Assembly: GCF_039654945.1 (NCBI RefSeq)
Contig: NW_027361989.1
Span: 2,790,001 to 2,854,000 of the forward strand
Source: Dendrobates tinctorius
Lineage: Eukaryota
Reading direction: 5' to 3'
DNA length: 64,000 nucleotides
Shown: piece by piece, positions 10,691 to 31,040 of the stretch
How the letters are laid out: every line of letters begins with the position of its first letter
Position numbering within the stretch: the stretch's first letter is position 1
The notes under the pieces: model-generated
Told to the model about the DNA's origin: nothing
Databases searched by the model: none
What the model saw: the letters and a program-made list of their open reading frames with translations, nothing else
Translations under genes and position numbers: made by a program

Positions 10691-12275
10691 CAGTGCCTTG
10701 CAAAAGTATTCGCCCCCTGGAACTTTTCAACCTTTTCCCACATATCATGCTTCAAACATAAAGATACCAAATGTAAATTTTTGGTGAAGACTCTACAACA
10801 AGTGGGACACAATTGTGAAGTTGAACGGAATTTATTGGTTATTTTAAATTTTTGTGGAAATTCAAAAACTGAAAAGTGGGGCGTGCAATATTATTCGGCC
10901 CCTATAACTTAATACTTTGTTGTGCCACCTTTTGCTGCGATTATAGTATGTAATCTATCAGTTTTGTACATGGAGAGACTGAAATTCTCGCCCATTCTTC
11001 CTTGGCAAACAGCTCGAGCTCAGTGAGGTTGGATGGAGATCGTTTGTGAACAGCAGTTTTCAGCTCTTTCCACAGATTCTTGATTGGATTCAGGTCTGGA
11101 CTGTGACTTGGCCATTCTAACACCTGGATACGTTTATTTGTGAATCATTCCATTATAGATTTTGCTTTATGTTTGGGATCATTGTTTTGTTGTAAGACAA
11201 ATCTTTGTCCCAGTCTCAGGTCTTTTGCAGACTCTAACAGGTTTCCTTCAAGAATGGTCCTGTATTTGGCTCTATCCATCTTCCCATCAATTTTAACCAT
11301 CTTCCCTGTCCCTGCTGAAGTAAAGCAGGCTCAAATCATGATGCTGCCACCACCATGTTTGACAGTGGGGATGATGTTTTCAGGGTGATGAGCTGTGCTG
11401 CCTTTATGACAAACATATCGTTTGGCATTGTTGCCAAAAAGTTTGATTTTGGTTTCATCTGACCAGAGCACCTTCTTCCACATGTTTGGTGTGTCTCCCA
11501 GGTGACTTGTTGCAAACTTTAAATGACACTTTTTATGGATATCTTTGAGAAATGGCTTTCTTGCCACTCTTCCATAAAGGCCAGATTTGTGCAGTGTACG
11601 ACTGATTGTTGTCCTATGGACAGACTGTCCCACTTCAGCTGTAGATGTCTGCAGTTCATCCAGAGTGATCATGGGCCTCTTGGTTGCATCTCTTATCAGT
11701 CTTCTCCTTGTTTGAGATGAAAGTTTAGAGGGACGGCCGGGACTTGGTAGATTTGCAGTGGGATGATACTCCTTCCATTTCAATATGATCGCTTGCACAG
11801 TGCTCCTTGAGATGTCTAAAGTTTTGGAAATCATTTTGTATCCAAATCCGGCTTTAAACTTCTCCACAACAGTATCACGGACCTACCTGTTGTGTTCCTT
11901 GGTCTTCATGATGCTCTCTGTGCTTCATACAGAACCCTGAGACTATCACAGAGCAGGTGCATTTATATGAAGACTTGATTACACACAGGTGGATTATATT
12001 TACTATCATTAGTCATTTAGGACAACATTGGATCATCCAGAGATCCACAATGAACTTCTGGAGTGAGTTTGCTGCACTGAAAGTAAAGGGGCTGAATAAT
12101 ATTGCACGCCCCAAAAATTTAAAATAACCAATAAATTTCGTTCAACTTCACAATTGTGTCCCACTTGTTGTTGATTCTTCACCAAAAATTTACATTTGGT
12201 ATCTTTATGTTTGAAGCATGATATGTGGGAAAAGGTTGAAAAGTTCCAGGGGCCGATTACTTTCGCAACGCACTG
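10691..12275 (-). mobile_element. Tc1/mariner IR/DR-type DNA transposon, full length, inactive
   Basis: TA on both flanks; ~200-bp inverted repeats (cagtgccttgcaaaagtattcg.. / ..tactttcgcaacgcactg) with an inner direct repeat; transposase remnant on the minus strand. Confidence 0.95.
10909..11909 (-). pseudogene. Tc1 DD34E transposase pseudogene
   Basis: MKTKEH start followed by a stop; paired-like HTH, GRP, WSDETK, HGGGSIM, WPSHSPDLNPIKNLW (catalytic E to K); ends TKY*. Stops and frameshifts present. Confidence 0.92.
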
Positions 12276-13169
12276 TATTGATAGATCTATCATTTATCGA
12301 TATATCTATCATCTATCTGTGTGTGTAAACATTATTCTTCAATGGAGTAAGTAAATGAAGAGGTTGAACAAGAAATGACATCACAATTCTTTTTGGTAAA
12401 TAATAGATTGTTATTTAGCCTACAAAAATGCATACAAATCCGCATGAAAAAAACGCTTGAAAATCTGTATAAAAATGCACAGATTTTTACCTGCATTTTC
12501 TGCTAAGAGATGCAGATTTTGTGCATAAAATTCTGCAGACAAATCCGCACCGTGTGCACATACCCTAAGGCTATGTTTCCACGTTCAGGAAACACTGCAG
12601 AGAGGACGCAGCTCCGTCCAAAGCTTTGCCGGCTTTAGTACGTGCGGTGACGCCACACAGCACCGGCTCCAGGTTTTTGAGGGCCCCGGGCAAAATAGTC
12701 TCAGTGGGCCCCCCCCTTTAACACATACCACGATCATCACTAGCTAGGTCCTGGAGAATGATGGTTGAGACCGGGGTCTTGAGTTTGGAGACATTGGAGG
12801 TTGTTGGTGTTGCTTTGCTAGGTCTGTTAGGTGGTCACCAACCCTCCCCCCCAAAGCCAGAACTCACCTTTGTTGTGGGTTGAGAACTTGAGATGAGAAG
12901 CCAGGAGATGTGTGTCAGCGAGTGTCCGGTGCGGCGGTGCCTGCTGCTGCAGCAGGAGCCGCCGGAGCGAGGAGCCACAACAAGCGCCGGGGCCCGGGAG
13001 ATCAGCCGCCAGTAGAGTTGAGCGAAACGGGTCGAAAAAATTCAAAAGTCGCCGACTTTTGGCAAAGTCGGGTTTCATGAAACGAAACCCGACCCTAGGA
13101 TGAGGTCGGCCACGAGGTCGGCGACTTACGCGCCAAAGTCGCGTTTCAAAAGTTTGTTTTGCGCTCTTT

Positions 13170-13320
13170 TTCAGCCAATCAGGATCCACGGACACTGTGG
13201 GCAACGTGATGACATAGGCACGGGTCACCACCATCTTTCAGAAGGGCATGCAAGTGATTGGCTTGCTTTGGTGGTCGTCACAGGGGGTATAAAAGGGCGT
13301 GCACGCCGACCGCCATCTTA
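13170..13320 (+). promoter_or_regulatory. Candidate Pol II promoter of the hAT transposase
   Basis: agccaatcag (CCAAT, ~13173), inverted gattggc (~13256), TATAAAAG at 13288-13295 and YY1-type ccgccatctt at 13310-13319, about 22 bp after the TATA start. Confidence 0.6.
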
Positions 13321-13584
13321 CTTCTGCCGATCTTAGTATAGGGAGAGGTTGCTGCTGATTCTGTAGGGAGAGCGTTAGGCAGGGAAGAAGACAAAAAAAC
13401 TGCTTCTGCTGCTAGCGATTTGGCCTGCACAACACACAAGTCACTGTGTGTGCAGTGCAAGGGGAGGCTATATTGTGGTGTATCAGTGGTGTTGGTTGTT
13501 GGGCTGCCTTCTAAAGCTTCCTGACATGCTGGCATTGCTGTTTACCCACTGCTCCGCAAACTGCTTTTTTAAAAGCAATCCAAT

Positions 13585-14910
13585 CTCCCTTATCCTCTCG
13601 TCACTTTGGTCACAGGCAGCTGTGCCATCGAGCGTGTGACATAGCGCTCAGATATCAGTGGGCCGCACACAATCCACAAGTGTCCAGTGTCCAAAAGTGT
13701 ACGCAGAGATTCAAAATCTCCATTATCCTCTCGTCACTTTGGTCACAGGCAGCTGTGCCATCGAGCGTGTCACATAGCGCTCAGATATCAGTGGGCCGCA
13801 CACAATCCACAAGTGTCCAGTGTCCAAAAGTGTACGCAGAGATTCAAAATCTCCATTATCCTCTCGTCACTTGGGTCACAGGCAGCTGTGCCATCGAGCG
13901 TGTCACATAGCGCTCAGATATCAGTGGGCCGCACACAATCCACAAGTGTCCACTGTCCACAAGTGTACGCAGAGATTCAAAATCTCCATTATCCTCTCGT
14001 CACTTTGGTCACAGGCAGCTGTGCCATCGAGCGTGTCACATAGCGCTCAGATATCAGTGGGCCACACACAATCCACAAGTGTCCACTGTCCACAAGTGTA
14101 CGCAGAGATTCAAAATCTCCATTATCCTCTTGTCACTTTGGTCACAGGCAGCTGTGCCATCGAGCGTGTCACATAGCGCTCAGATATCAGTGGGCCGCAC
14201 ACAATCCACAAGTGTCCAGTGTCCACAAGTGTACGCAGAGATTCAAAATCTCCATTATCCTCTCGTCACTTTGGTCACAGGCAGCTGAGCCATCGAGCGT
14301 GTCACATAGCGCTCAGATATCAGTGGGCCGCACACAATCCACAAGTGTCCAGTGTCCAAAAGTGTACGCAGAGATTCAAAATCTCCATTATCCTCTCGTC
14401 ACTTTGGTCACAGGCAGCTGTGCCATCGAGCGTGTCACATAGCGCTCAGATATCAGTGGGCCGCACACAATCCACAAGTGTCCAGTGTCCAAAAGTGTAC
14501 GCAGAGATTCAAAATCTCCATTATCCTCTCGTCACTTTGGTCACAGGCAGCTGTGCCATCGAGCGTGTCACATAGCGCTCAGATATCAGTGGGCCGCACA
14601 CAATCCACAAGTGTCCACTGTCCACAAGTGTACGCAGAGATTCAAAATCTCCATTATCCTCTCGTCACTTTGGTCACAGGCAGCTGTGCCATCGAGCGTG
14701 TCACATAGCGCTCAGATATCAGTGGGCCGCACACAATCCACAAGTGTCCACTGTCCACAAGTGTACGCAGAGATTCAAAATCTCCATTATCCTCTCGTCA
14801 CTTTGGTCACAGGCAGCTGTGCCATCGAGCGTGTCACATAGCGCTCAGATATCAGTGGGCCGCACACAATCCACAAGTGTCCACTGTCCACAAGTGTGTG
14901 CAGAAATTCT
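13585..14910. repeat. Tandem array, about 10 x 133 bp, inside the hAT upstream of the transposase
   Basis: tatcctctcg recurs every 133 bp from 13591 to 14788; units differ at only a few positions. Confidence 0.97.
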
Positions 14911-14995
14911 AAAACTCCCCTGTCCTATAGACACCTTGTACTTTGTTTTACATTACTATATAGTTTGTTGGATTTTGTCTACATTTCTACCAAAA

Positions 14996-17900
14996 ATGAG
15001 GAAGGCTGGTGGAAGAGGCCGTGGAATTGGGCGGGGGTTGGCAGCTGGTAATGATGGTGTTGGTGGTGGATCTGATGGTAGTGGCAAGAGCAAAATAGGA
15101 CCAAATGCAGGAGGTGCTGACCCTGCGTCATCGTCTGTCTACATAAGGCCTCGAACGCTTAGTTTTCTAGGAGTTGGCAAACCGCTTTTAAAGGCAGAGC
15201 ATCAGGAAAAAGTTTTGTCTTACATTGCTGACTCAGCCTCCAGCTCTATCGCCTCCTCTTCTTCAGTTGTAAAAAGTAAAAGCACTGAGTCGTCATTGGA
15301 GGCTCATGTTCATGAACCACACCTTTCCTTGTGTCCTTCACCCCAACCAAGATTGAAGGATGACGCAGGCCATACTACTGATTACTCCATGGAGCTGTTT
15401 TCACATACCATGCCTGGATTATCAAGTCAAATGGTGAATTACCCAGGCCAAGATGAATCTGACATGGAGTGCACTGATGCACAGCCGCTGATGGATGATT
15501 CTGCTGGTACATTCACTCAGAGCACTACATTGTCCTCGCAGTGTACAGAGCCAGATTTTGACCCTGATGAGACTCAGGTGCCCCTTCCCGCACACTATAC
15601 CACCATACATGGTGACACAGAGAAAGGTGCACATGACATAGAAGAGGAGGTGATGGATGACCCAGTTGTTGACCCAGATTGGCATCCATTGGGGGAAGAG
15701 GGTGCTGCTTCCAATAGCTCAGATGAGGAGCATCCACAGCAGACATCGACATCGCAACAGCTGTTATCTGGCAGGCCCGGAGCACTCCAAAGACAGGTTC
15801 CAAACATCAAAAGAGTTGCTGGACAGCTTGTCCAGAGGGTCAAAAGATCACAGCGTGCTAGGCCGCAAAATGTCTGCCAAAGTAGGAAGAGTGCAGTGTG
15901 GCACTTTTTTGAACAAAATCCTCATGATCAGGCCAAGGTTATCTGTAAGAAGTGCGCAAAGACCTTTAGCCGAGGGAAAAATCTGAAAAATTTGAATACC
16001 AGTTGCATGCTTAGACATTTAACCAGCATGCACTTGCAAGCGTGGACACAACACCAAACCTCAAGTGCCACATGTGCAACTGATCACAACGAAGGTAGTC
16101 AGCAACGCTACATTGTTTCCACCACTGTAAGCACACCGGTTAGCACAGCAGCAAATGTTGAGGTGTCGTTGCAAGGCCACAGCAGTCAGGGAATCCCACT
16201 GTTATATCAACGAAAGACTGATTCTAGGCCATCAGAAAGAACACCAACTACATCACCATCATCAACCCTCTCTCAGTCCGCCCTGTCCACCGCTACTTCC
16301 ACCATATGCAGCTCTCAAGTCCAGCTCACCCTCCCAGACACTATGAGTAGGTCAAGAAAGTACTCAGTCTCTCATCCGCGTACACTGGGTTTGAACGCCC
16401 ACATTGCCAAACTAATCTCGTTTGAGATGATGCCCTTTCGGTTGGTGGAAAGCACAGCTTTCCGCGAACTCATGGCCTATGCAGTACCACGCTATGACCT
16501 ACCCAGTCGCCATTTCTTCTCTCGCAAAGCCATCCCAGCCCTCCACCATCATGTGAAAGACCGCATTGTCCATGCACTCAAGCAGTCAGTGAGTGGAAAG
16601 GTGCACCTCACAACTGATGCATGGTCCAGTCTGCATGGCCAGGGCCGTTACGTGTCCATCACTGCGCACTGGGTTAATGTGGTGGATGCAGGGTCCACAG
16701 GGGACAGCGGTGGTGGGACAGTGCTGCCTAGCCCACGGTCTAGGAAACAGTTGGCTGTAGGCGTTCGACCCTCCTCCTCCTCCTCCTCCTCCAGAAGCGA
16801 CAGCTCATCCACAGAGCGCAGTCGTACGAGCACTCCATCTGCAGCTGCCACTGTTGCACACGATGTGTCCCCCTATCGAGCAGCTAGTGGAAAGCGTCAG
16901 CAGGCTGTGTTGCAGATGATGTGTTTGGGCGACAGACACACCGCCGAGGTGCTGGCCGAGTACTTGAAGCGACAAACTGAGTCATGGCTGGGCAGTGTAC
17001 ATCTTGAGGCAGGCAAGGTAGTTAGTGATAACGGCCGTAATTTTGTGGCAGCCATAGCCCTTTCAAAACTCAGCCACATACCTTGCTTGGCTCACACCTT
17101 GAACCTGGTGGTGCAGTGCTTCCTCAAAAATTATCCGGAGTTAACAGCCCTGCTCCAGAAGGTGCGAAGACTGTGCGCGCACATCCGCCGGTCGCCTGTA
17201 CACTCCGTTCGTATGCAGAAGCTGCAGCGATTGCTCCACCTTCCCAACCACCGCCTCATTATCGACATTGCAACAAGGTGGAACTCCACCCTGCACATGG
17301 TGGAGCGGCTGTGCGAGCAGAGGCAGGCCATAATGCATTTGTGGGAGGATACACGGCCAGGCACTTTGAGAGCAGACATGGAGTTGACAGGCGTGCAGTG
17401 GTCGAAGCTGAAAGACCTTTGTAAAGTCCTTCAGTGTTTTGAGGAATGCACACGGCTGGTAAGCGCAGACGACGCCATCCTAAGCATGAGCATCCCACTT
17501 ATGCGTCTGCTCATGCAAACTTTGACGCACCTTAAGGAGCAGGCGTCTGCAGCCAATGTTGATGAGGAGGAAGAGGAGGAGGGAATCCTTGATGACATTC
17601 AGCCATTGTCTGCTCAGGGACCTCTCCTGGACGAGGTGGAGGAAGAAGAGGAGGAGGAGGAGGAGGATGATGGGGATGATTACTTAGGGGAGGAGGATGC
17701 ATCTCATGGGGCAAGTGAAAATGTTGGCGTGGCAAGGTCTGGTACAGGGTTTGTGCGTGACTGGAGGGATGTGGATTTGCCAGAAAGTGCTCCTCCACCC
17801 AGCACTCGCAGTGCATCATTGACACCGGGAACATTGGCCCACATGTCAGATTATGCCTTGCAGATCCTAAAAAGGGACCCCCGCATTGCCAAAATGATGA

Positions 17901-18541
17901 ACGATGACGACTACTGGTTGGCCAGCATCCTGGATCCACGCTATAAAGGCAAATTACAAAACATCATGCCACAGGAGAACCTTGACCTAATATTGGCTAA
18001 TAAACAAGCAACTCTGGTAAATCGGTTGCTTGAGGCATTCCCAGCACACAGCAGCGGTGATGGTTCTCACACGAGCCGTACGGGCCGGGGGCAGCTTGGC
18101 AGAGGTGTTGGTGGTGCACACAGCAGAAGTGGCGTTGGAGACAGGGGTTTCATGACAATGTTGTGGACTGATTTTTCAAATACCGCTCACACAACTGGTA
18201 ATACTGCATCGATGGAAAGTGACAGGAGACAGCAGTTGTCAACTATCGTTACAAACTACTTTTCCTCCCATATCGATGTTCTCCCACACAGGTCATTCCC
18301 CTTTGACTATTGGGCCGCTAAACTGGACACCTGGCCTGAATTGGCCCAATATGCCTTACAGGAGCTCGCTTGCCCAGCTGCAAGTGTGCTATCGGAAAGA
18401 GTCTTCAGTGCAGCTGGATCAATCCTGACAGAAAAAAGGACCCGTCTGTCAACCCAAAATGTGGATGATCTAACCTTCATTAAAATGAACCATGCATGGG
18501 TTTCCAAGGATTTTGTCCCACCTTCCCCTGATGACACATAG
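14996..18541 (+). CDS. hAT-superfamily transposase (BED zinc finger, DDE, C-terminal dimerisation domain), 1181 aa, uninterrupted
   Basis: First in-frame ATG after the array is at 14996 (MRKAGGRGRG). BED: SAVWHFF..CKKC..LRHLTSMH. Catalytic LTTDAWSS, VSDNG, CLAH (CxxH), TRWNST, CPAASVLSERVFS; LDPRYK and RTRLS motifs. Confidence 0.95.
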   Translation: MRKAGGRGRGIGRGLAAGNDGVGGGSDGSGKSKIGPNAGGADPASSSVYIRPRTLSFLGVGKPLLKAEHQEKVLSYIADSASSSIASSSSVVKSKSTESSLEAHVHEPHLSLCPSPQPRLKDDAGHTTDYSMELFSHTMPGLSSQMVNYPGQDESDMECTDAQPLMDDSAGTFTQSTTLSSQCTEPDFDPDETQVPLPAHYTTIHGDTEKGAHDIEEEVMDDPVVDPDWHPLGEEGAASNSSDEEHPQQTSTSQQLLSGRPGALQRQVPNIKRVAGQLVQRVKRSQRARPQNVCQSRKSAVWHFFEQNPHDQAKVICKKCAKTFSRGKNLKNLNTSCMLRHLTSMHLQAWTQHQTSSATCATDHNEGSQQRYIVSTTVSTPVSTAANVEVSLQGHSSQGIPLLYQRKTDSRPSERTPTTSPSSTLSQSALSTATSTICSSQVQLTLPDTMSRSRKYSVSHPRTLGLNAHIAKLISFEMMPFRLVESTAFRELMAYAVPRYDLPSRHFFSRKAIPALHHHVKDRIVHALKQSVSGKVHLTTDAWSSLHGQGRYVSITAHWVNVVDAGSTGDSGGGTVLPSPRSRKQLAVGVRPSSSSSSSRSDSSSTERSRTSTPSAAATVAHDVSPYRAASGKRQQAVLQMMCLGDRHTAEVLAEYLKRQTESWLGSVHLEAGKVVSDNGRNFVAAIALSKLSHIPCLAHTLNLVVQCFLKNYPELTALLQKVRRLCAHIRRSPVHSVRMQKLQRLLHLPNHRLIIDIATRWNSTLHMVERLCEQRQAIMHLWEDTRPGTLRADMELTGVQWSKLKDLCKVLQCFEECTRLVSADDAILSMSIPLMRLLMQTLTHLKEQASAANVDEEEEEEGILDDIQPLSAQGPLLDEVEEEEEEEEEDDGDDYLGEEDASHGASENVGVARSGTGFVRDWRDVDLPESAPPPSTRSASLTPGTLAHMSDYALQILKRDPRIAKMMNDDDYWLASILDPRYKGKLQNIMPQENLDLILANKQATLVNRLLEAFPAHSSGDGSHTSRTGRGQLGRGVGGAHSRSGVGDRGFMTMLWTDFSNTAHTTGNTASMESDRRQQLSTIVTNYFSSHIDVLPHRSFPFDYWAAKLDTWPELAQYALQELACPAASVLSERVFSAAGSILTEKRTRLSTQNVDDLTFIKMNHAWVSKDFVPPSPDDT

Positions 18542-18960
18542 GGTTACAGAAAAATGGCTTGCTTTGGTCCACCTCTTCCTGGTACTTCACCTATTTCGCC
18601 TTTTGCATCAGTTGAATGTCCAACATCAACATATGCCACTTTCTAAAACTCCCTAACTGTGCTGCCTCCCCGCCCCATGGCAGGGGTCACCACCTAGCGC
18701 ACGACACCGTGCGAGTGCCGTTGCCCTGGACAGGTGGGTAGGCCGACTCTTGGGCGCGGGCACTGGCACAGGGTCCCTCATAGTGCAATCAAGTGTCTCT
18801 GATGGTGGTGGTGCACACCCGCCGTCAGACACACCGCTGTACTATGAGGGGCCCAGTGCCAGTACCGACACCCACGAGTGGGCCCCCCTTGCTTGGCCAG
18901 GGCCCCAGCATTTGCAATCTTTACCTCTCCCTGCTCCTCCGCTGTGTAATCTGGGCCGTC

Positions 18961-21900
18961 AAATCCATACTGTGCCTGACACCGTCTGAGCCTGCCTCCT
19001 GATGTATAGACATATATTTTGAATGTGTACGCTATCCATACATGTTATCCGGGGATACGTTACCCCTTCTAAACTTTGTGCAATGATGTGCAATCCATAC
19101 TGGGCCTAACACCGTCTGAGCCTGCCTCATGCTGTATAGACATATATTTTGAATGTGTACGCTATCCATACATGTTATCCGGGGATACGGTACCCCTTCT
19201 AACCTTTGTGCAATGACGTGCAATCCATACTGGGCCTAACACCGTCTGAGCCTGCCTCATGCTGTATAGACATATATTTTGAATGTGTACGCTATCCATA
19301 CATGTTATCCGGGGATACGGTACCCCTTCTAACCTTTGTGCAATGACGTGCAATCCATACTGGGCCTAACACCGTCTGAGCCTGCCTCATGCTGTATAGA
19401 CATATATTTTGAATGTGTACGCTATCCATACATGTTATCCGGGGATACGGTACCCCTTCTAACCTTTGTGCAATGACGTGCAATCCATACTGGTCCTAAC
19501 ACCGTCTGAGCCTGCCTCATGCTGTATAGACATATATTTTGAATGTGTACGCTATCCATACATGTTATCCAGGGATACGGTACCCCTTCTAACCTTTGTG
19601 CAATGACGTGCAATCCATACTGGGCCTAACACCGTCTGAGCCTGCCTCATGCTGTATAGACATATATTTTGAATGTGTACGCTATCCATACATGTTATCC
19701 GGGGATACGGTACCCTTTCTAACCTTTGTGCAATGACGTGCAATCCATACTGGGCCTAACACCGTCTGAGCCTGCCTCATGCTGTATAGACATATATTTT
19801 GAATGTGTACGCTATCCATACATGTTATCCGGGGATACGGTACCCCTTCTAACCTTTGTGCAATGACGTGCAATCCATACTGGGCCTAACACCGTCTGAG
19901 CCTGCCTCATGCTGTATAGACATATATTTTGAATGTGTAAGCTATCCATACATGTTATCCAGGGATACGGTACCCTTTCTAACCTTTGTGCAATGACGTG
20001 CAATCCATACTGGGCCTAACACCGTCTGAGCCTGCCTCATGCTGTATAGACATATATTTTGAATGTGTACGCTATCCATACATGTTATCCAGGGATACGG
20101 TACCCTTTCTAACCTTTGTGCAATGACGTGCAATCCATACTGGGCCTAACACCGTCTGAGCCTGCCTCATGCTGTATAGACATATATTTTGAATGTGTAC
20201 GCTATCCATACATGTTATCCGGGGATACGGTACCCCTTCTAACCTTTGTGCAATGACGTGCAATCCATACTGGGCCTAACACCGTCTGAGCCTGCCTCAT
20301 GCTGTATAGACATATATTTTGAATGTGTACGCTATCCATACATGTTATCCGGGGATACGGTACCCCTTCTAACCTTTGTGCAATGACGTGCAATCCATAC
20401 TGGGCCTAACACCGTCTGAGCCTGCCTCATGCTGTATAGACATATATTTTGAATGTGTACGCTATCCATACATGTTATCCGGGGATACGGTACCCCTTCT
20501 AACCTTTGTGCAATGACGTGCAATCCATACTGGGCCTAACACCGTCTGAGCCTGCCTCATGCTGTATAGACATATTTTTTGAATGTGTACGCTATCCATA
20601 CATGTTATCCGGGGATACGGTACCCCTTCTAACCTTTGTGCAATGACGTGCAATCCATACTGGGCCTAACACCATCTGAGCCTGCCTCATGCTGTATAGA
20701 CATATATTTTGAATGTGTACGCTATCCATACATGTTATCCGGGGATACGGTACCCCTTCTAACCTTTGTGCAATGACGTGCAATCCATACTGGGCCTAAC
20801 ACCGTCTAAGCCTGCCTCATGCTGTATAGACATATATTTTGAATGTGTACGCTATCCATACATGTTATCCGGGGATACGGTACCCTTTCTAACCTTTGTG
20901 CAATGACGTGCAATCCATACTGGGCCTAACACCGTCTGAGCCTGCCTCATGCTGTATAGACATATATTTTGAATGTGTACGCTATCCATACATGTTATCC
21001 GGGGATACGGTACCCCTTCTAACCTTTGTGCAATGACGTGCAATCCATACTGGGCCTAACACCGTCTGAGCCTGCCTCATGCTGTATAGACATATATTTT
21101 GAATGTGTACGCTATCCATACATGTTATCCAGGGATACGATACCCCTTCTAACCTTTGTGCAATGACGTGCAATCCATACTGGGCCTAACACCGTCTGAG
21201 CCTGCCTCATGCTGTATAGACATATATTTTGAATGTGTACGCTATCCATACATGTTATACGGGGATACGGTACCCTTTCTAACCTTTGTGCAATGACGTG
21301 CAATCCATACTGGGCCTAACACGGTCTGAGCTTGCCTCATGCTGTATAGACATATATTTTGAATGTGTACACTATCCATACATGTTATCCGGGGATATGG
21401 TACCCCTTCTAACCTTTGTGCAATGACGTGCAATCCATACTGGGCCTAACACCGTCTGAGCCTGCCTCATGCTGTATAGACATATATTTTGAATGTGTAC
21501 GCTATCCATACATGTTATCCAGGGATACGGTACCCTTTCTAACCTTTGTGCAATGACGTGCAATCCATACTGCGCCTAACACCGTCTGAGCCTGCCTCAT
21601 GCTGTATAGACATATATTTTGAATGTGTACGCTATCCATACATGTTATCCGGGGATACGGTACCCCTTCTAACCTTTGTGCAATGACGTGCAATCCATAC
21701 TGGGCCTAACACTGTCTGAGCCTGCCTCATGCTGTATAGACATATATTTTGAATGTGTACGCTATCCATACATGTTATCCGGGGATACGGTACCCCTTCT
21801 AACCTTTGTGCAATGACGTGCAATCCATACTGGGCCTAACACCGTCTGAGCCTGCCTCATGCTGTATAGACATATATTTTGAATGTGTACGCTATCCATA

Positions 21901-23525
21901 CATGTTATCCAGGGATACGGTACCCTTTCTAACCTTTGTGCAATCACGTGCAATCCATACTGGGCCTAACACCGTCTGAGCCTGCCTCATGCTGTATAGA
22001 CATATATTTTGAATGTGTACGCTATCCATACATGTTATCCGGGGATACGGTACCCCTTCTAACCTTTGTGCAATGACGTGCAATCCATACTGGGCCTAAC
22101 ACCGTCTGAGCCTGCCTCATGCTGTATAGACATATATTTTGAATGTGTACGCTATCCATACATGTTATCCGGGGATACGGTACCCCTTCTAACCTTTGTG
22201 CAATGACGTGCAATCCATACTGGGCCTAACACCGTCTGAGCCTGCCTCATGCTGTATAGACATATATTTTGAATGTGTACGCTATCCATACATGTTATCC
22301 GGGGATACGGTACCCCTTCTAACCTTTGTGCAATGACGTGCAATCCATACTGGGCCTAACACCGTCTGAGCCTGCCTCATGCTGTATAGACATATATTTT
22401 AAATGTGTACGCTATCCATACATGTTATCCGGGGATACGGTACCCCTTCTAACCTTTGTGCAATGACGTGCAATCCATACTGGGCCTAACACCGTCTGAG
22501 CCTGCCTCATGCTGTATAGACATATATTTTGAATGTGTACGCTATCCATACATGTTATCCGGGGATACGGTACCCCTTCTAACCTTTGTGCAATGACGTG
22601 CAATCCATACTGGGCCTAACACCGTCTGAGCCTGCCTCATGCTGTATAGACATATATTTTGAATGTGTACGCTATCCATACATGTTATCCGGGGATACGG
22701 TACCCCTTCTAACCTTTGTGCAATGACGTGCAATTCATACTGGGCCTAACACCGTCTGAGCCTGCCTCATGCTGTATAGACATATATTTTGAATGTGTAC
22801 GCTATCCATACATGTTATCCGGGGATACGGTACCCCTTTTAACCTTTGTGCAATGACGTGCAATCCATACTGGGCCTAACACCGTCTGAGCCTGCCTCAT
22901 GCTGTATAGACATATATTTTGAATGTGTACGCTATCCATACATGTTATCCAGGGATACGGTACCCTTTCTAACCTTTGTGCAATGACGTGCAATCCATAC
23001 TGGGCCTAACACCGTCTGAGCCTGCCTCATGCTGTATAGACATATATTTTGAATGTGTACGCTATCCATACATGTTATCCAGGGATACGGTACCCTTTCT
23101 AACCTTTGTGCAATGACGTGCAATCCATACTGGGCCTAACACCGTCTGAGCCTGCCTCATGCTGTATAGACATATATTTTAAATGTGTACGCTATCCATA
23201 CATGTTATCCGGGGATACGGTACCCCTTCTAACCTTTGTGCAATGACGTGCAATCCATACTGGGCCTAACACCGTCTGAGCCTGCCTCATGCTGTATAGA
23301 CATATATTTTGAATGTGTACGCTATCCATACATGTTATCCGGGGATACGGTACCCCTTCTAACCTTTGTGCAATGACGTGCAATCCATACTGGGCCTAAC
23401 ACCGTCTGAGCCTGCCTCATGCTGTATAGACATATATTTTGAATGTGTACGCTATCCATACATGTTATCCAGGGATACGGTACCCTTTCTAACCTTTGTG
23501 CAATCACGTGCAATCCATACTGGGC
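18961..23525. repeat. Tandem array, 35 x 130 bp, inside the hAT downstream of the transposase
   Basis: aatccatac recurs every 130 bp from 18962 to 23512 with no indels; most units carry a KpnI site (ggtacc). Confidence 0.98.
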
Positions 23526-25428
23526 GTGAGAACGGCTGGCGAGCTGTTAAGCAAGCTACAGCACCTGTCCAGACAAGTACAGGGATTCCCTAGCGAGGAG
23601 ACTTATTTGATTGTTTTCTATGTTGGGACAGCAATTTTTGGGGAGCACTATACTCTGGAGAATGATAGATGGGGCCCACCATACACTGGAACATTCCAAA
23701 GGTGGACATCAGACACTGGAGCAGCATTTACAGGGCCCATTATACACTAGAGCATTAGAAATGGGGCCCATTATGTTTGGAGCATTATTTGGGCCCATAA
23801 GACAGTGGAGCTTCATCCATGGGGACCAACATATACTGTATCATTATGTGGAGCTCATCATATACTGTTTCAAACATTATATGGGACCAATGATTTTGTA
23901 TGGAGAAATAGATGGGCCTCGTCATGAGATGCAAAAAGTGAGGTATTTTTCATTGTACTATACCGCTATTTCTCTGCCGTATCGGAGCATGATGAGTTGT
24001 GGTATGTGTTAAAGGGGCGCTCTTTCGCCCAGGGCACATGAAAACCTGCAGCCAGCCCTCCCCCCCCACAAATTTAGCCAAATAACCCCCATTTTTCAGT
24101 GCGTAACTTGTATTATGAAGTTAATTAAGGTTGACAAGCTTAAGTAAGAAGAATTGATGCTTTTGGCATTCAAATGGGCACTGTAGGTGTGTTTCCTGTC
24201 CTCCTCTCACTGCCGACTTTTATTCCCCATTGACTTACATTGGGTTTCGTGTTTCGGGACGACCCCGACTTTTCCCTATAATCGGACGATCTTGCTCGAC
24301 CCGACTTTTGGAAAAGTCGGGTTTCACGAAACGAAACGCGACCCTAAAAAAGCAAAAGTCGCTCAACTCTAGCCGCCAGTGTCTGGTGCAGCTGTGGAAG
24401 CTGCTGCAGCAGTAGCCGCCAGAGCGAGGTGCCTCACTGAGCGCTGGGTGCCACTGCCAGCTGGAGCTGCCGCAGCAGGAGCCGCCACACCACTCACTGT
24501 CTTGCAGTGAGGAGCCTCACTCAGCGAGCGCCAGCCACTCACTAGGTGTCAGGAGATGTGTCGCTCGTCGCCGGTGTCTGGTCGCCGCCCGGTCCCTCCG
24601 TTTCCAGAGAGAGGCACGCAGCGCGCTTCACAAAGCTGCGTCCTCCGCCCCGTCACTTACTCCCTGCAGCACACGTGACAAGAGGCAGGGGAGGGGTGCT
24701 CTCCACCAATCAAAGGAAGACACTCCTGGGCTGCTGGACTGTGATTGGCTAACAGCATGTGTCTCCTGCCGGCGCCACCGAATCAGATTCAAGGTCGCAT
24801 TCCCCAGCAGCCAGACAGTGTGTAGGCCCTTCTGTCGTGCCAGGGCCCCGTCACTTGCCCGGGTACGCCCGGTGCTGACGCCGGGCCTGATCTCCGCATG
24901 TTATCATTGAACCGTGTGGAATCTCCGCATCCTATTCATAGAACTGGGTTATTTATCTTGTGTAGACTGAGCGTCTCCGTGAGATAAACAGACATGCTGC
25001 GGTCTAGAGAGATGCGCCACATGTGCGCATACGCGGCTCTGCCACCTGCGTGTTTGAACACATAGTGGAGACGGGATATGATAAAATCCCCTCCACTGTG
25101 CCGTAACATCTGGATGTATTGGATGTATGAATGAGGCCTTAGTCAGAGACTGGGAAGTAATAGAAGAATAAAATCCATCTAGTAATCCTCCAATGTCTGC
25201 TGGACATGGGGTGGGGAGAGTTTATTGCTCAGTTAGTACAGACACCTGACTTCTTGCTGTTAACCAGTTACTGCTCTCTGGTCCACCACACTGCAGTGTC
25301 CAAAGAGGAAGACAGTGAGACAGGCAGCGACATCGCATCAGAGAGCTCGTGACCTCAGAAGATCCCCAGATCCTGGTATTGTGACATAATATTAAGAACA
25401 ATATTCATTCATTGATATTGCACTATTA

Positions 25429-26419: not shown

Positions 26420-29400
26420 AAATAAACACAGCTAGCAGCGTTTTTTTCCATTGCTGCAAGTACCGCATTTTGCTGGATCGCGGCAAAACCGCAAGTGCCG
26501 CACATGTCCGCAAGTCCCATAGTGAATGAATGAGGCCGAATGCAGCATTGCCATAAGTGATTCGTTACGTGACAGATGCGGAAAAACTGACGGATCTGCC
26601 GCGAATGGCGAAAATCGCTGATGTGAAAGTAGCCTAAGTCATTACCGACAGTGTCTGCATTAGTCATACTCACCAATGGGGGGGCAGCAAGAAAAGTGCC
26701 TAGGGCAGCATAAACTCTAAATACGGCCCTGGGTACCATGTTTATTTATATTAGTCTTTTTGATTGTGTGGTATTGCACCTTGTTCGGCAGCATGATGAT
26801 AAAGCATTGTTTTTTGTCTAGTTTTTTTTTTAAGGGGTTCACTAAAGGGGTTAACTAGTGGGACAGTTTCATAGGGCGGGTCGTTACGGATGTGGCGATA
26901 CTAAATATGTGTATTTTTATTGTTTTTGTTTTTTTATTTACAAGAAAAGAATTTATTAGGGATTTTTTTTATTTATTTAGGATTTTTTTTTATAAATTAC
27001 TTTTACACTTTTTTTTTTTGCATTTTATTATATTGTCCCAATGTGGGACATTACAATAAAGTGTCAGATAGCTGATCTGACACTTTGCAGTGCGCTGTGT
27101 CAGATTAGCGATCTGACAGGCACTGCACAGGCTTTCTTAATGCCTGCTCTCAGCAGGCACTGAGGAAGCTGCCTTCCTGCAGGCCCCCGTGGCCATCTTG
27201 GATCCGGGGGCCTGCTGGGAGGAGACCCTCGAAGCAGCGCGAGCACATCGCGCTGCTCTGAGGGTCTCAGGGAAGCGTGCAGGGAGCCCCCTCCCTGCGC
27301 AATTCTTCCCTAATCCCCTGCTACACCGCGATCATGTTTGATCGCAGTGTGCCAGGGGTTAATGTGCCGGGGGCGGTCCGTGACCACCCCTGACACATAG
27401 TGCCGGGTGTCAGCTGTGATAATCAGCTGACACCCGACCGCGATCAGCGGCGCTCCCCTCCGGGAGGGCCGCTGATCGTGCTGACTTACCATCCCGTCCC
27501 CGGTCATAAGGGCCCGGGTACCGTGGACGGGATGGTACGTCAGATGTCAGAAGGGGTTAAACTTTTCACGAGCATCCATTTGTATGTTTGGTTTTCCTCC
27601 AACACTCATCTGCTTTATATAATTCAGCATCTCACGAACATGTTGCACTTTGCCCTTTATACACACACATGCGTCTTTGGCAGCATATTTTGGACAGGCA
27701 TTTCTTAGGCCAAGTCTCACACGCACATCTATTACACCGATCTTCAAACGGGCATGAAACCCATTCTGGTAATTGATGGTGGCTAAACAACGAATCATTG
27801 TTGGCTGTATCCTGGATCTCATACCTCCCATAGCCACTGCTGTTATTAATCATGTACGTTCCCATGCCTGTCATCACCATGCCCCTTTTCCAGATCACTT
27901 CATCCAACGATTCATCCGCCATATTGTTACTAAAAACATGCACCTTCCCAGCAGCAACTGTGTAGGAAACCACGTTACAGTTTTGCAAGGTGTTCATGAT
28001 GCCCCTAAAAAAAATGTGCACACTATGTTGTTATCTATCCCCAGGGGGAAATGTTTTCCAGGCCATACACTTAGTGTATGGGCATTCCAAGTCTAGGAGA
28101 CCCACTCCTTTAATTTGGGCATAGTTTTAAATCAGGCCTTCCTCCACGTCTCATCATCCGCCACCACTAGATCACCAGCGTTAACGTGTTCCGTGCAGTT
28201 ACAGCCAGTGTCAAATTCCGAACAAGGGTGAGTAGTTTTGCTCGGCATAAAATACTTGTTATGGAAAAGGTGGAGGTGTATCCCCATGGGGGAATTGTTT
28301 GTCAGCCCAATACACTTAGTGTATGGTAATTACAAGTCTAGAAGACCAGCTCCTTTTTAATGGGACATTTTTTGTTAAGAGGCCCTCCTGTTATGAATGG
28401 GTCACCGAGGATGAAAAAATAAACAACAAGCTAAGTCTCAGAAAACCAGAGAAGTTGGTAACTATACAGATTGCAGATCCCTGAACTTAACCGCACAACT
28501 AGCAGCAGTCGTGGAGCGTTCCTACGATGGTCCTAGACGCCTCGTCACAACCAAAGAGCTACATAAGCCTAAAGCAGGAAAAGAGGAAAACTAACTTCCC
28601 CAGAGCAGACCCCAAAGGAAAGACAGCCCTCCACATGTATTGACGGTGAAACAGAAATTACAAACAAAGGCAGGAAAATAGGCTGAGCAAACGATGGGGC
28701 CCGACTAACTAGAAAGGACAGGAAAGACACTGTCTGCAATCTGCCAAAAAAACCTACAAAAATATTGTCCAACACTTCTGATAACAAAATTAACCCTGAA
28801 GTCACTAGACTTCTACACCTATATCAGCACTCTGAAATATTCTGAGACAGAGCAAAAAGAGGCCAATCTAATAAGGGACAAAAAGCAGCTTATCAAATAT
28901 TGATACATAGGAGTGGAAATTCAGCGTAGCCCAGCAGGGGCAGGCTGACCACACAAGAAACTGAACTGAAGAACAAGCGCAAGTGTGAACAATAGCAAAA
29001 AACAAACTTAACTTGAGAAGACTGGAAGAGAGCTGAAGTCCAGGACCTGAGAAGCAGACTGAATCACCAGCACTAGGATAGGGCGTCGGCTGTCTTATAT
29101 CCAGTCTGATACTCCAGAGATCCAATTGTTATCTTCTTTATCAGGTGGCAGATCACTACCACTTAAACCAACCGCACTACCTCCTGTCACCACCAGAGGG
29201 AGAACGGGAGGGGTGGAGCCGAAAATGAGTTCATAAAACCCTCCTACGTTTTTTCCAAGGGGGGATTGGGCTTATTGCGGTGCATATGACTTGGTAGCAG
29301 GGCAGGCCTTGCAGTCAATGCATAAGAAAACAGAAGGGCAGTACAAAATGAATGTGAAGTGGATTTTCCTGTTCCCTTCCAGTATGTGGGTTCAAAGGCT

Positions 29401-30230
29401 TATTGGGGTGCATATGACTTGGCAGCAGGGCAGGCCTTGCAGTCAATGCAACATTTTTTGTGGAAGCCCTCCTGGACATCTCGTGAAAAGGGTATTGGGG
29501 TGCGTTGTAATTCTTTTCAGCCCATCCACTCATTGCATAGGCTATAGCAGTTTAGGAGACCCACTGTTTAATAATGGCCCTTTAAGAAGATGAATGCCGC
29601 CTGATGTCCCGGTACAGATAGGCTCCATGACTTTGAGTCCCTCATTCATACATGACACAAGATATGTCTGCTTATGTGTCACACACCACAAAGCAGCTAG
29701 GGTTGGTAAATGTTACATTGACATTTCCCAGTGAATGCATTTGTATTGGTTTAAAGCAATGTTAAAGTTGAAAAACGCTTCAAAAGCGCTGTATCTGCAC
29801 ATTGTTCCTCCACTACTTGGGCTATTTGGTCTGGGGTTAATTATTTTGCCTTATATACAAGTCATTAACCTGGAAAGGATGTACCGTAACATATTTCCCA
29901 GCAAAATCCGTTTTGGTTTCGTTTTGGTATGTTTTTTGGTGCATCGGTAAAAATGTCATGAAACTCTGACATTGTTTAAAGCTGTGACCTAGGAGTCAGG
30001 AATGCTTCCAGGGGCGATCCCCATGATGGTCCTGTGCCATTTGAGCAGTGTTTCCATCATTTCCCGATGTTTTTAGACCTTAAAAGGACCCCCGGGGGGA
30101 TCATGGTAAAAATGCTCGGGTCTCCCATAGACTTACATTGGGCTCGTTGTTCTGTCCGAGTACCCGAGTATTCCAATTTGCTTGACCTAAGCACTGAGCA
30201 CTTGAGCATTTTAGTGCTCGCTCATCACTA
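26420..30230 (-). repeat. Right arm of the inverted duplication, ending in an hAT-type terminus (tagtgatgagcga on the minus strand)
   Basis: Reverse complement of 7342-10445 plus ~38 bp of extra terminal sequence; interrupted by a solo LTR at 28389-29238. Confidence 0.92.
28389..29238. mobile_element. Solo LTR (850 bp)
   Basis: tgttatgaa...ttcataaaa termini; ccctcc duplicated at 28383-28388 and 29239-29244; absent from the left arm; similar to 57708-58538. Confidence 0.85.
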
Positions 30231-30754
30231 ATTGTAACCAGAACCTTTGAAATTTCGGGATATTACAGACCCACTTTTTAGTTTGACATGTTAAATCTAC
30301 CGATCTCAAAGAACAACTGCCCATAATAATATATGTTATTCACCATAAATACTGGACGTGAGGCACCATGTATCTTATCAATGGTATCTAGTGGAGCAGA
30401 AGCTATCCTCCAGGAACACAGATATAGTATATCATTAATCTGCAGATAGCTTATCACTATAGTCGGATGGTAGATATATATCTAGATGGGAAAAGATGAC
30501 TAGGGGGAAAGGGTGAGGATGGAAGTAAGATGGGGAATTGTGGCCGGGGAGAGAGCACAGTAGGTGCTCATCCGCGCCGATTCTACCGGCAAGAATCTTC
30601 TTATGGGAGAGAAAGAAGGGGGAACAAAAATATATTTGATCATATATATTATATTTATACCTAATTTATAACCCACTTGTTGATTGCCTCTCTTAGGCCA
30701 GACACATCACATAATCACAGGGAGTGAGTGTGAGGACAAAATAGTATTGTGACC

Positions 30755-31040
30755 CGGTCACTGCTTCACACAGAGTCTTCATTGCTAGTGCATAAATCCA
30801 GAAGCAGGAGAACGTGGCGAGCCCCACAATGTCCACATACCAAAGAGGCACACACAGACAGGACAGATCTATAGGGAGGATTCCATTACCCAGAGGCGCT
30901 CTTTTAAGCACGTTTCGCTTGTAATGCTTCCTCAGAAAGGGGTTTCTACAAGAGAAACGCGGGTAATGTGCAGTTTGCCCCGTTCTGCTGCTTCTGGATT
31001 TATGCACCAGCAATGAAGACTCCATGTGAAGCCGTGACCG
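30755..31040. repeat. ~290-bp imperfect palindrome with a hammerhead-like core (second copy at 49478-49762)
   Basis: cggtcactgcttcaca..gtcttcattgctagtgcataaatccagaagcag pairs with ctgcttctggatttatgcaccagcaatgaagac..tgtgaagccgtgaccg; inner arms gtttcgcttgta / tacaag(a/c)gaaac. Confidence 0.85.

What the first reader, a model, noticed from the sequence alone, without database searches (positions are those of the whole stretch)
13013..24371. Intact hAT transposon carrying two different homogenised satellite arrays around its transposase
Seen: perfect TIRs, a perfect 8-bp TSD and an unbroken 1181-aa ORF with all hAT catalytic motifs, in a window where the other coding TEs are truncated or decayed. 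About 5.9 kb of its 11.36 kb is tandem repeat: ~10 x 133 bp upstream and 35 x 130 bp downstream, unrelated in sequence but almost equal in period. Established: hAT elements give 8-bp TSDs, and TEs can seed satellites. Inference: this is a young, possibly active cut-and-paste vehicle that moves satellite arrays. The arrays might be functional parts (nucleosome phasing, transposase or host-factor binding, self-silencing) rather than post-insertion noise.
Basis: partly seen in the sequence, partly recalled or inferred. Interest (0 to 1): 0.85.

Follow-up and report, generated by a model that had tools for sequence, protein, structure and literature searches.

The report
Frog hAT transposon with repeat arrays
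This is an intact cut-and-paste (hAT) jumping gene of the dyeing poison frog; its two internal repeat arrays are inherited parts of the whole transposon family, and the upstream one appears to be a long, start-codon-free leader of the transposase message.

Summary
Window 13013-24371 is an 11,359-bp hAT element. It has perfect 13-bp TIRs, a perfect 8-bp TSD (GCCGCCAG) and an open 1181-aa BED + DDE + hAT-dimerisation transposase. It carries 10 x 133 bp upstream and 35 x 130 bp downstream of the ORF, and the two units are unrelated.

The arrays are not noise private to this copy.
- Two other D. tinctorius copies carry the same unit families, with different counts and unit lengths: A 14 x 133 and about 32 x 119; B 4 x 135.
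- Every Ranitomeya relative fetched has arrays in the same two slots. Their units are 111-175 bp, up to at least 72 copies, and have no detectable homology to the D. tinctorius units.

New here: a conserved CCAAT/TATA promoter lies upstream of array A. Sense-strand ATG is almost absent from all upstream arrays and leaders (observed/expected 0-0.17). The antisense strand, the downstream tails and unrelated frog hAT upstream regions are normal. So array A is most likely a transcribed 5' leader purged of upstream AUGs.

Array B shows no constraint. The subterminal AAGTCG motifs are absent from both arrays.

The scan had already noted satellite-bearing hATs elsewhere in this genome. Verdict: a new variant of a known kind; activity and any array function are untested.

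The parts
13005..13012 (.). left target-site duplication GCCGCCAG
   Evidence: identical to 24372-24379
13013..13025 (+). 5' terminal inverted repeat TAGAGTTGAGCGA
   Evidence: perfect reverse complement of 24359-24371; the same TIR occurs in L003 copies, and TAGGGTTGAGCG in Ranitomeya
13026..13145 (+). 5' subterminal region with AAGTCG/CGACTT short repeats (putative transposase-binding sites)
   Evidence: all 10 AAGTCG hexamers of the element lie in the first 130 or last 160 bp; the binding role is inferred from Ac and Hermes subterminal repeats
13170..13330 (+). conserved putative promoter: CCAAT box, inverted CCAAT (ATTGG), TATAAAAG, invariant GCCGACCGCCATCTTAC
   Evidence: invariant across D. 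tinctorius and Ranitomeya copies in alignment A1; promoter function is inferred from the motifs
13310..14995 (+). long 5' leader, almost free of sense ATG (one at 13526)
   Evidence: 1 ATG against 30 expected; 13526 to 14996 is the longest ATG-free stretch of the whole window
13582..14918 (+). array A, 133 bp x 10.05, inside the leader
   Evidence: TRF 98% matches; per-unit table; homologous arrays in L003 copies
14996..18541 (+). transposase ORF, 1181 aa, with BED finger, DDE/RNase-H-like core and hAT dimerisation domain
   Evidence: dN/dS 0.34-0.53 against Ranitomeya copies
18738..18887 (+). conserved 150-nt hairpin about 200 nt after the stop codon
   Evidence: -49 kcal/mol, z -6.9; conserved in six copies of three species, 54 pairs of which 3 show compensatory changes; sub-threshold mir-306 hit
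18962..23525 (+). array B, 130 bp x 35.1, in the 3' non-coding tail
   Evidence: TRF 98% matches; per-unit table with shared and recombinant variants; 135-bp x 4.1 homologue starting at the same point in L003 copy 1
23526..24210 (+). 3' internal region, including a degenerate roughly 30-bp minisatellite (about 23640-23900)
   Evidence: 95.7% identical to L003 37534-37995; sequence read
24211..24358 (+). 3' subterminal region with AAGTCG/CGACTT repeats
24359..24371 (-). 3' terminal inverted repeat
24372..24379 (.). right target-site duplication GCCGCCAG

Best explanation
The locus is a structurally intact, recently inserted copy of an autonomous hAT (Ac-clade, 'ZBED4/6-like') DNA transposon family of dendrobatid poison frogs. 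Both arrays are inherited, family-typical components. They fill the element's only two internal non-coding compartments.

Array A lies between a conserved CCAAT/TATA promoter and the start codon. It forms most of a very long 5' leader that is kept free of sense-strand AUGs, so scanning ribosomes can still reach the transposase start codon.

Array B lies in the 3' tail, after a conserved hairpin. It behaves as an unconstrained hypervariable region.

The arrays move with the element. They change unit number and unit length between copies by concerted evolution. The likely processes are slippage, unequal sister-chromatid exchange, and possibly repeat-length change during gap repair after excision. 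The arrays diverge faster than the unique sequence, so within one genus-level split the units become unrecognisable while the two-array layout persists.

Shown here: the anatomy, the presence of arrays in all related copies, the ATG depletion, and the absence of the subterminal motif from the arrays.
Inferred: that the leader is transcribed, how the arrays change, and that the element is currently active.
For: Anatomy and catalytic motifs.

Other D. tinctorius copies (L003, assembly GCA_039654945.1):
- Copy 1 has its own TSD (TTTATTAC), about 32 x 119-bp units homologous to A (z 10-19) and 4.1 x 135-bp B units that begin at the same nucleotide.
- Copy 2 is 98.2-98.4% identical in unique sequence and has 14.2 x 133-bp A units.

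Ranitomeya variabilis and R. imitator copies (L001, L002, L007-L010; ORF 76-82% nt identity; perfect TIR and TSD in L002 and L008):
- All have arrays in both slots. Upstream units are 139-175 bp with 4.6 to at least 72 copies. Downstream units are 111-128 bp with 3.5-38.6 copies.
- No unit homology to D. tinctorius was detected.

The promoter motifs are invariant across genera.

Sense ATG in leaders:
- Window: 1 observed against 30 expected.
- L003 copy 2: 0 against 45.
- L002: 2 against 78.
- L008: 2 against 40.
- L009: 6 against 180.
- ATG is the most or second-most depleted trinucleotide in every leader. CAT and the five other A/T/G permutations are ordinary, and the tails have observed/expected 0.5-1.1.
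- The depletion holds on non-redundant sequence in each lineage (P from 0.003 to 5e-7).
- Decayed copies have regained some ATGs.
- Upstream regions of distant frog hATs are normal.
- The longest ATG-free run of the 64-kb window ends exactly at the start codon.

Concerted evolution: indels that change the period (130 against 135, 133 against 119) are fixed across whole arrays. The edge unit of B keeps the ancestral states shared with L003 copy 1.
Against: - No transcript data were available. The TSS, retention of array A in the mature mRNA, and the poly(A) site are all inferred. There is no AATAAA or ATTAAA anywhere after the stop codon in this copy.
- A leader of 1.7 kb to at least 10 kb is unusually long for a scanned 5' UTR.
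- Repeat units are copies of one another, so the independent evidence for ATG avoidance rests on about three unrelated unit families plus the unique leader segments.
- Only two other D. tinctorius copies could be fetched. One is decayed and one is cut by the locus end. Whether the 35-unit length of array B arose before or after this insertion is therefore unknown.
- Because the transposase acts in trans, selection on any single copy's leader should be weak.
Confidence: 0.75

Rival explanations
1. The arrays are local expansions that arose after insertion in this one copy (noise). The element originally carried single units.
For: Units are 98-99% alike within each array. B has 35 units here against 4.1 in L003 copy 1. 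Block-like sharing of variants suggests growth in place.
Against: Independent copies at other sites carry multi-unit arrays of the same families. B starts at the same nucleotide in both copies. All Ranitomeya copies also have arrays in both slots. A weaker form, that part of the 35-unit length arose after insertion, remains open.
Confidence: 0.1
2. The arrays are cis-acting parts of the transposition machinery: extra transposase or host-factor binding sites, or spacers that phase nucleosomes, needed for mobility.
For: Arrays occur in both compartments in every copy examined, with unit lengths in a band of 111-175 bp. Known precedent: the tandem repeats in the long TIRs of Galileo bind its THAP domain (PMC3688188).
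Against: The subterminal AAGTCG motif is absent from both arrays. Unit sequences are not conserved between genera, or between A and B. A 502-bp derivative with the same TIRs and a 7/8 TSD has no arrays. Unit number varies from about 4 to at least 72.
Confidence: 0.07
3. Array A is a stack of promoter monomers, as in the mouse L1 5' UTR. Each unit would carry a start site or enhancer, and monomer number would tune transposase transcription.
For: Tandem monomers lie directly upstream of the ORF in all copies, and their sequence turns over between lineages as L1 monomer types do (own knowledge). ATG avoidance is expected if transcripts start inside the array. Arrays of 10 kb or more are hard to read as a single scanned leader.
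Against: A conserved CCAAT/TATA promoter already lies upstream of the array. No shared promoter motif of 6 nt or longer was found among the unit families. No expression data were available.
Confidence: 0.2
4. The arrays are assembly artefacts: over-expansion or mis-joining of repeats.
For: Near-identical tandem units are hard to assemble, and no raw reads are available here.
Against: Units carry a structured pattern of variants with no indels. The same unit families occur at two other loci of a public D. tinctorius assembly. Equivalent arrays occur in two other species' assemblies.
Confidence: 0.03

Closest known systems
Autonomous hAT elements of the Ac clade (maize Ac, Hermes; vertebrate ZBED1/4/6 are domesticated relatives)
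   Same: 8-bp TSD, short TIR beginning TAG, short subterminal repeats, BED finger, DDE core with inserted helical domain and conserved W, and a C-terminal dimerisation domain. In five of six TSD pairs (four perfect, one differing at position 2) a copy fits nTnnnnAn, and all six have A at position 7.
   Different: About half of the element is tandem repeat, in two arrays that flank the ORF. The leader is 1.7 kb and ATG-free. The protein is 1181 aa with a roughly 300-aa low-complexity N-terminus.
Frog non-autonomous transposons that carry or seed tandem repeats (FEDoR in Rana temporaria, PMC12054243; the Xenopus MITE-driven satellite of Scalvenzi and Pollet 2014, cited there; earlier scan notes in this genome)
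   Same: TIR/TSD-bounded frog DNA elements with internal tandem-repeat motifs whose unit number varies between copies.
   Different: Those elements are non-coding. Here an autonomous element with an intact transposase keeps arrays in two fixed compartments across genera, and one array lies in the coding transcript's leader.
Hypervariable tandem-repeat region in the 3' UTR of plant Ty3 (Ogre-type) LTR retrotransposons (Macas et al. 2009, listed in PMC12628747; content from own knowledge)
   Same: A fixed non-coding slot of an autonomous element holds tandem repeats. Their position is conserved while their sequence differs between lineages. Such a slot is a possible source of satellites.
   Different: That is a retrotransposon and this is a cut-and-paste DNA transposon. 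Here there is also a second, upstream array with a translational constraint.
Mouse L1 5' UTR monomer arrays (own knowledge)
   Same: Tandem monomers of 100-200 bp lie directly upstream of the element's ORF, vary in number between copies and are replaced in sequence over time.
   Different: Promoter activity of the units is not shown here. A separate conserved TATA promoter lies upstream. The element class is different.
Galileo / Foldback elements with tandem repeats in long TIRs (PMC3688188, PMC4168063)
   Same: A DNA transposon with internal tandem repeats of variable number.
   Different: In Galileo the repeats are part of the TIRs and bind the transposase. Here the arrays lie inside the short termini and lack the subterminal motif.

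Membership tests
hAT superfamily | 8-bp target-site duplication | tested here: met
   GCCGCCAG on both sides. Other copies: TTTATTAC, CTAGGGAC, CTCAAGAT.
hAT superfamily | short terminal inverted repeats (about 10-25 bp) | tested here: met
   13-bp perfect TIR TAGAGTTGAGCGA.
hAT superfamily | transposase with DDE RNase-H-like core (D, D, E, plus CxxH and RW motifs) and C-terminal hAT dimerisation domain | tested here: met
   PF05699 E 6e-11. A profile of 16 relatives hits Hermes at E 2e-42. It aligns TTDAW, SDNG, CLAHTLNL, TRWNS and SERVFS with the Hermes catalytic motifs.
hAT superfamily | N-terminal BED zinc finger | tested here: met
   PF02892 E 1.8e-11 at residues 299-346.
hAT, Ac family | TSD consensus nTnnnnAn | tested here: inconclusive
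   All six TSD pairs have A at position 7. T at position 2 is present in four perfect pairs and in one copy (GTTATGAC) of a fifth pair whose other copy reads GCTATGAC. This copy's own TSD has C at position 2.
active autonomous transposon | demonstrated excision or insertion polymorphism | not testable with these tools
   Indirect evidence only: intact ORF, TIRs and TSD; a 98% identical paralogue; several copies with different TSDs.
satellite DNA | the same monomer in long free-standing arrays at many loci, independent of the element | not tested
   No D. tinctorius genome search tool was available. There is no other copy of either unit in the 64-kb window. In every case seen, the arrays (1.3 and 4.6 kb here) lie inside the element, so 'internal minisatellite-like arrays' is the safer name.
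domesticated ZBED host gene | single-copy, syntenic, without TIRs or TSD | tested here: not met
   TIRs and TSD are present. There are several copies at unrelated sites in three species.
L1-like monomeric promoter array | tandem monomers immediately upstream of the ORF, variable in number, replaced in sequence between lineages | tested here: met
L1-like monomeric promoter array | each monomer has promoter activity | not testable with these tools
   No expression or reporter data. No shared motif of 6 nt or longer among the unit families.

The most novel reading that the evidence does not exclude
This dendrobatid hAT lineage keeps, by selection, a tandem-monomer, AUG-free 5' leader or promoter array that tunes transposase output. 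The unit sequence turns over rapidly while the array organisation persists. This would be a DNA-transposon counterpart of the mouse L1 monomer promoter. The element would also act as a vehicle that seeds new 110-175-bp satellites across giant frog genomes.
Probability: 0.2. Interest if true: 0.7.

Novelty: new variant of a known kind. Interest (0 to 1): 0.5.

Why it matters
Transposons that carry tandem repeats are one accepted source of satellite DNA, and frogs already supply non-coding examples. This case adds two things.

First, an autonomous, apparently functional hAT keeps arrays in two fixed compartments across at least two genera, while the repeat sequence itself is replaced.

Second, the upstream array carries a clear, strand-specific signature of selection, the absence of upstream AUGs. 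This makes it part of the expressed gene and not junk.

That gives a concrete, testable link between repeat-array dynamics and transposase expression. It also provides a candidate active element for work on genome gigantism in poison frogs, where hATs make up 3.9% of the assembly (PMC11152451).

For annotation, it warns that about half of such elements will be masked as 'satellite' or 'unknown'.

Tried and rejected
- An exact-protein look-up of the 1181-aa ORF found no record.
- No other copy of the element or of either unit lies in the window.
- The search of earlier findings by sequence was blank. The operators state that such a blank means nothing.
- Homology between the A and B units, and between D. 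tinctorius and Ranitomeya units, was tested with rotation-insensitive local alignment against shuffles. It was not detected (z below 4). Only an excess of shared 5-mers was seen among the upstream families (8 against 2.3 expected, P 0.0035), with no shared 6-mer.
- My impression of a common ACTGGGCC-like motif did not survive this unbiased test.
- Arrays as extra subterminal binding sites: rejected, because there is no AAGTCG in either array.
- Unit B has no secondary structure beyond shuffles (z +0.9). Unit A has moderate dyad symmetry (z -3.9).
- Rfam gave only one sub-threshold miRNA-like hit, on the post-ORF hairpin.
- Poly(A) signals are too few to interpret.
- Distant frog hAT relatives do not all share the layout. 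L004 has no arrays. L005 is unclear. L006 has short-period arrays upstream.
- A third protein search with the N-terminal half found no further D. tinctorius gene models.
- I did not use structure prediction, complex prediction or the metagenome scans. They would not bear on the question.
Full report
**1. Observation**

The element spans window 13013-24371 (11,359 bp). The ends read GCCGCCAG|TAGAGTTGAGCGA ... TCGCTCAACTCTA|GCCGCCAG. This is a perfect 13-bp TIR and a perfect 8-bp TSD.

One long ORF runs from ATG 14996 to the stop at 18541, 1181 aa.

Tandem Repeats Finder gives 133 bp x 10.1 at 13582-14918 and 130 bp x 35.1 at 18962-23525. Both have 98% matches and no indels. A per-unit table shows 1-5 mismatches per full unit in A and 0-7 in B against the consensus. 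The edge units are the most divergent. The two arrays total 5,901 bp. The two unit consensuses share no similarity beyond shuffles. The window contains no N.

**2. The protein**

Pfam finds zf-BED (residues 299-346) and the hAT dimerisation domain (1095-1164). PDB sequence search hits Hermes.

A profile of the protein with 15 relatives hits Hermes at E 2e-42. It aligns TTD541AW, VSD678NG, C697LAH700, TRW762NS and SE1134RVFS with the Hermes motifs TIDLW, TDRG, CSSH, TRWNS and SERTFS. From the literature on Hermes, these hold D180, D248, W319 and E572.

**3. Whose genome, and which relatives**

Earlier scan notes name the genome as the dyeing poison frog, Dendrobates tinctorius. This fits what I found: a public D. 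tinctorius assembly holds a 98% identical copy (see section 4).

The best protein matches are auto-named 'ZBED4/6-like' models of Ranitomeya variabilis and R. imitator (71-75% identity). Other frog hAT-like proteins follow at about 40%, and true vertebrate ZBED4 at about 27%. The exact protein is not on record.

**4. Other copies in D. tinctorius**

A 330-aa D. tinctorius gene model, 90% identical to the C-terminus, led to locus L003 (GCA_039654945.1). L003 holds two more copies, 4.1 kb apart and in the same orientation.

Copy 1 (27516-38200):
- It has the same TIR, its own TSD (TTTATTAC) and a decayed ORF.
- Upstream it has about 32 units of 119 bp, homologous to A (78% identity without gaps, z 10-19).
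- Downstream it has 4.1 units of 135 bp of the B family (93%). This array begins at the same nucleotide as array B of the window.

Copy 2 (from 42314, cut by the locus end):
- Its 5' 569 bp are 98.4% identical and its first 285 codons 98.2% identical to the window copy.
- It has 14.2 A units of 133 bp.

That criterion is not met. The arrays are inherited and mobile with the element, and their unit number differs between copies.

Indels that change the period (130 against 135; 133 against 119) are fixed through whole arrays. The first unit of array B keeps states shared with copy 1. This is the usual picture of concerted evolution with less homogenised edges.

The A consensus differs by 6% plus two indels between the window and copy 2, whereas the unique flanks differ by under 2%. 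Array A therefore evolves faster than its surroundings.

**5. Ranitomeya copies**

Six loci were fetched: L001, L002, L009 and L010 from R. variabilis, and L007 and L008 from R. imitator. They hold copies with 76-82% ORF nucleotide identity.

Ends:
- L002 (4979-19365) has perfect TIRs (TAGGGTTGAGCG) and the perfect TSD CTAGGGAC.
- L008 (5730-16735) has the same TIRs and the perfect TSD CTCAAGAT.

Every copy has arrays in both slots.

| Slot | Arrays (unit length in bp x copies) |
|---|---|
| Upstream | 139 x 5.6 (twice), 153 x 27, 139 x 4.6, 140 x 10.5, 175 x 7.5; and 139-bp units filling all 10 kb of available flank (at least 72 units) in L009 |
| Downstream | 115 x 14, 124 x 25, 119 x 3.5 and 124 x 9.5, 119 x 8.8 and 128 x 11.8, 115 x 38.6, 122 x 13.4 |

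Units are related among the Ranitomeya copies. B115 against B124 gives z 27, and the L002, L007, L008 and L010 upstream units form one family. They show no detectable homology to the D. tinctorius units.

The sequence before the arrays is well conserved between genera. This covers the 5' 400 bp, the start-codon context and a 150-nt hairpin after the stop. The layout is therefore conserved while the repeat sequence is replaced.

Because array A evolves several times faster than unique sequence, I cannot tell continuous descent from repeated birth.

dN/dS between the window ORF and the Ranitomeya ORFs is 0.34-0.53. This is a history of purifying selection diluted by the decay of individual copies.

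**6. Where the arrays sit in the gene**

Alignment of five 5' ends shows several invariant motifs at window positions about 13170-13330, upstream of array A:
- a CCAAT box;
- an inverted CCAAT;
- GGGGnTATAAA(A/G)GGGC;
- the block GCCGACCGCCATCTTAC.

By established knowledge of RNA polymerase II core promoters, this is the likely transposase promoter. That is an inference. Array A then lies between the promoter and the ATG.

I asked whether the leader avoids upstream start codons. It does, strikingly.

| Leader | Sense ATG observed | Expected (first-order Markov) |
|---|---|---|
| Window | 1 | 30 |
| L003 copy 2 | 0 | 45 |
| L002 | 2 | 78 |
| L008 | 2 | 40 |
| L001 | 3 (all in a duplicated copy of the ORF start) | 36 |
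| L009 (10-kb array) | 6 | 180 |

Further points:
- ATG is the most or second-most depleted of all trinucleotides in every leader.
- The antisense CAT and the other five permutations of A, T and G are unremarkable.
- The 3' tails have observed/expected of 0.5-1.1.
- Units are copies of one another, so I repeated the test on non-redundant sequence: the unique leader plus one repeat period. This gave P = 0.003 (window), 4e-4 (L001), 4e-6 (L002) and 5e-7 (L008), with CAT as expected.
- Decayed copies (L003 copy 1, L007) have regained ATGs.
- Upstream regions of three distant frog hAT relatives show no depletion.
- In the whole 64-kb window, the longest ATG-free run on the + strand (1,470 bp) ends exactly at the transposase start codon. 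The next longest is 531 bp.

The simplest reading is that array A is present in the mature transposase mRNA as a 5' leader, and that lineages that stayed autonomous were filtered for units without AUG. This shows constraint. It does not show a positive function.

**7. What the arrays are probably not**

- The hexamer AAGTCG/CGACTT occurs ten times in the element. All ten lie within the first 130 or last 160 bp, and none in the arrays. By analogy with Ac and Hermes subterminal repeats, these are the likely transposase-binding sites. The arrays do not multiply them.
- A 502-bp element in R. imitator (L008 2850-3351) has the same TIRs, the first 102 bp and a 7/8 TSD, but no arrays.
- Array B has ordinary ATG content, no folding signal (z +0.9) and no conserved sequence.
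- Unit A has moderate dyad symmetry (z -3.9).
- Unit lengths (111-175 bp) spread too widely to argue for nucleosome phasing, which I could not test.

**8. Mechanism of array change (inferred)**

Array B holds scattered subtype variants (90A with 105T) and apparent recombinants that carry only one of the two. It also shows period-changing indels fixed across arrays and conserved edge units. Together these point to unequal exchange, gene conversion and slippage.

For a cut-and-paste element there is an added opportunity. Excision is followed by gap repair copied from the sister chromatid. In yeast such repair is known to expand and contract tandem repeats (own knowledge). This was not tested here.

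**9. Literature**

- Frog transposons with internal tandem repeats are known: FEDoR in Rana temporaria (PMC12054243), which also cites the Xenopus MITE-driven satellite of Scalvenzi and Pollet 2014.
- TE-derived minisatellites are known in Xenopus subtelomeres (PMC10794172).
- A review of TE-derived satellites (PMC12628747) lists Macas et al. 2009 on hypervariable 3' UTR repeats of plant LTR retrotransposons. This is the closest conceptual parallel for array B.
- Galileo has tandem repeats in its TIRs that bind its transposase (PMC3688188).
- The D. tinctorius genome paper reports hATs at 3.91% of the assembly. The words 'tandem' and 'satellite' do not occur in it (PMC11152451).
- A full-text search for hAT with 'internal tandem repeats', 'transposase' and 'autonomous' returned five papers; going by their titles and abstracts, none described this layout.
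- The scan itself had already noted satellite-bearing hATs on other pieces of this genome (s1-376861, s1-386052).

**10. Verdict**

The element is an intact hAT that carries its arrays along. The proposed functions of the arrays are unsupported, with one exception: the upstream array is evidently a constrained part of the transcript leader.

The kind of thing, a transposon with internal tandem repeats, is known. Three findings are new to me and directly testable:
- an autonomous hAT with two arrays in fixed slots;
- turnover of the repeat sequence across genera while the layout is kept;
- an AUG-free repetitive leader.

Noticed in passing
window 18738-18887: A 150-nt near-perfect hairpin about 200 nt after the transposase stop (-49 kcal/mol, z -6.9). 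It is conserved in six copies of three species, with 54 predicted pairs of which 3 show compensatory changes. It gives a sub-threshold mir-306-like Rfam hit (35.5 bits against a gathering score of 52). A second copy lies near the 3' end in the other copies. Its function is unknown.
   Followed up: partly
L003 37203-37488; L001 15752-16150; L002 18609-19009; L007 29971-30372; L008 15978-16379: All copies except the window copy carry, between the downstream array and the 3' terminus, a roughly 170-bp fragment of the transposase's own N-terminal coding region (aa 158-214). A second copy of the hairpin follows it. The window copy lacks this roughly 630-bp segment.
   Followed up: partly
L009 1-9999: In one R. 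variabilis copy the upstream 139-bp array fills the whole 10 kb of fetched flank (at least 72 units), directly abutting the start codon. Its only six ATGs all lie more than 7.8 kb upstream of the start codon.
   Followed up: partly
L008 2850-3351: A 502-bp MITE-like element with the family's TIRs (TAGGGTTGAGCG), the first 102 bp of the autonomous element and the TSD ACGGACAC/ACGGACAT. It has no arrays.
   Followed up: partly
L003 27516-38200 and 42314 onward: Two copies of the family lie 4.1 kb apart in the same orientation in D. tinctorius. This would be expected if this hAT, like Ac, tends to transpose to linked sites.
   Followed up: no
window 40872-41751 and L009 27428-27805: The same 30-bp minisatellite consensus (AGCGGAGCCGTGTGTGTACGAGGTGTACGG) forms arrays in this window (29 copies) and in an R. 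variabilis locus (13 copies). It is a repeat shared across the two genera.
   Followed up: no
window 23640-23900 and L003 19991-20234: A degenerate minisatellite of about 28-30 bp (GGGCCCATTATA...GAGCATTA-like) lies inside the element's 3' region. It resembles, in reverse orientation, a free-standing 28-bp array elsewhere in D. tinctorius.
   Followed up: no
window 12918-12991 and 24375-24448: The insertion target is a GC-rich stretch with a period of about 90 bp (80% identity between the two flanks once the element is removed).
   Followed up: partly
window 13526: The single upstream ATG of the leader opens a roughly 38-codon uORF. The 98% identical copy L003 copy 2 has no ATG there. It is either a recent change in this copy or lies upstream of the real start site.
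   Followed up: partly
upstream unit consensuses (window array A; L001, L002): The three unrelated upstream unit families share more 5-mers than shuffles do (8 against 2.3, P 0.0035). Each contains a short GAGAT...ATCTC-type inverted repeat. This could be residual homology or a small common hairpin.
   Followed up: partly
window 32062-33237 (-), 51785-53466 (-), 4300-6834 (+), 11334-11867 (-), 63128-63889 (+): The surroundings hold two C2H2 zinc-finger arrays, split reverse-transcriptase ORFs, a Tc1/Sleeping-Beauty-type HTH fragment and a Ty3-type integrase SH3 fragment.
   Followed up: partly
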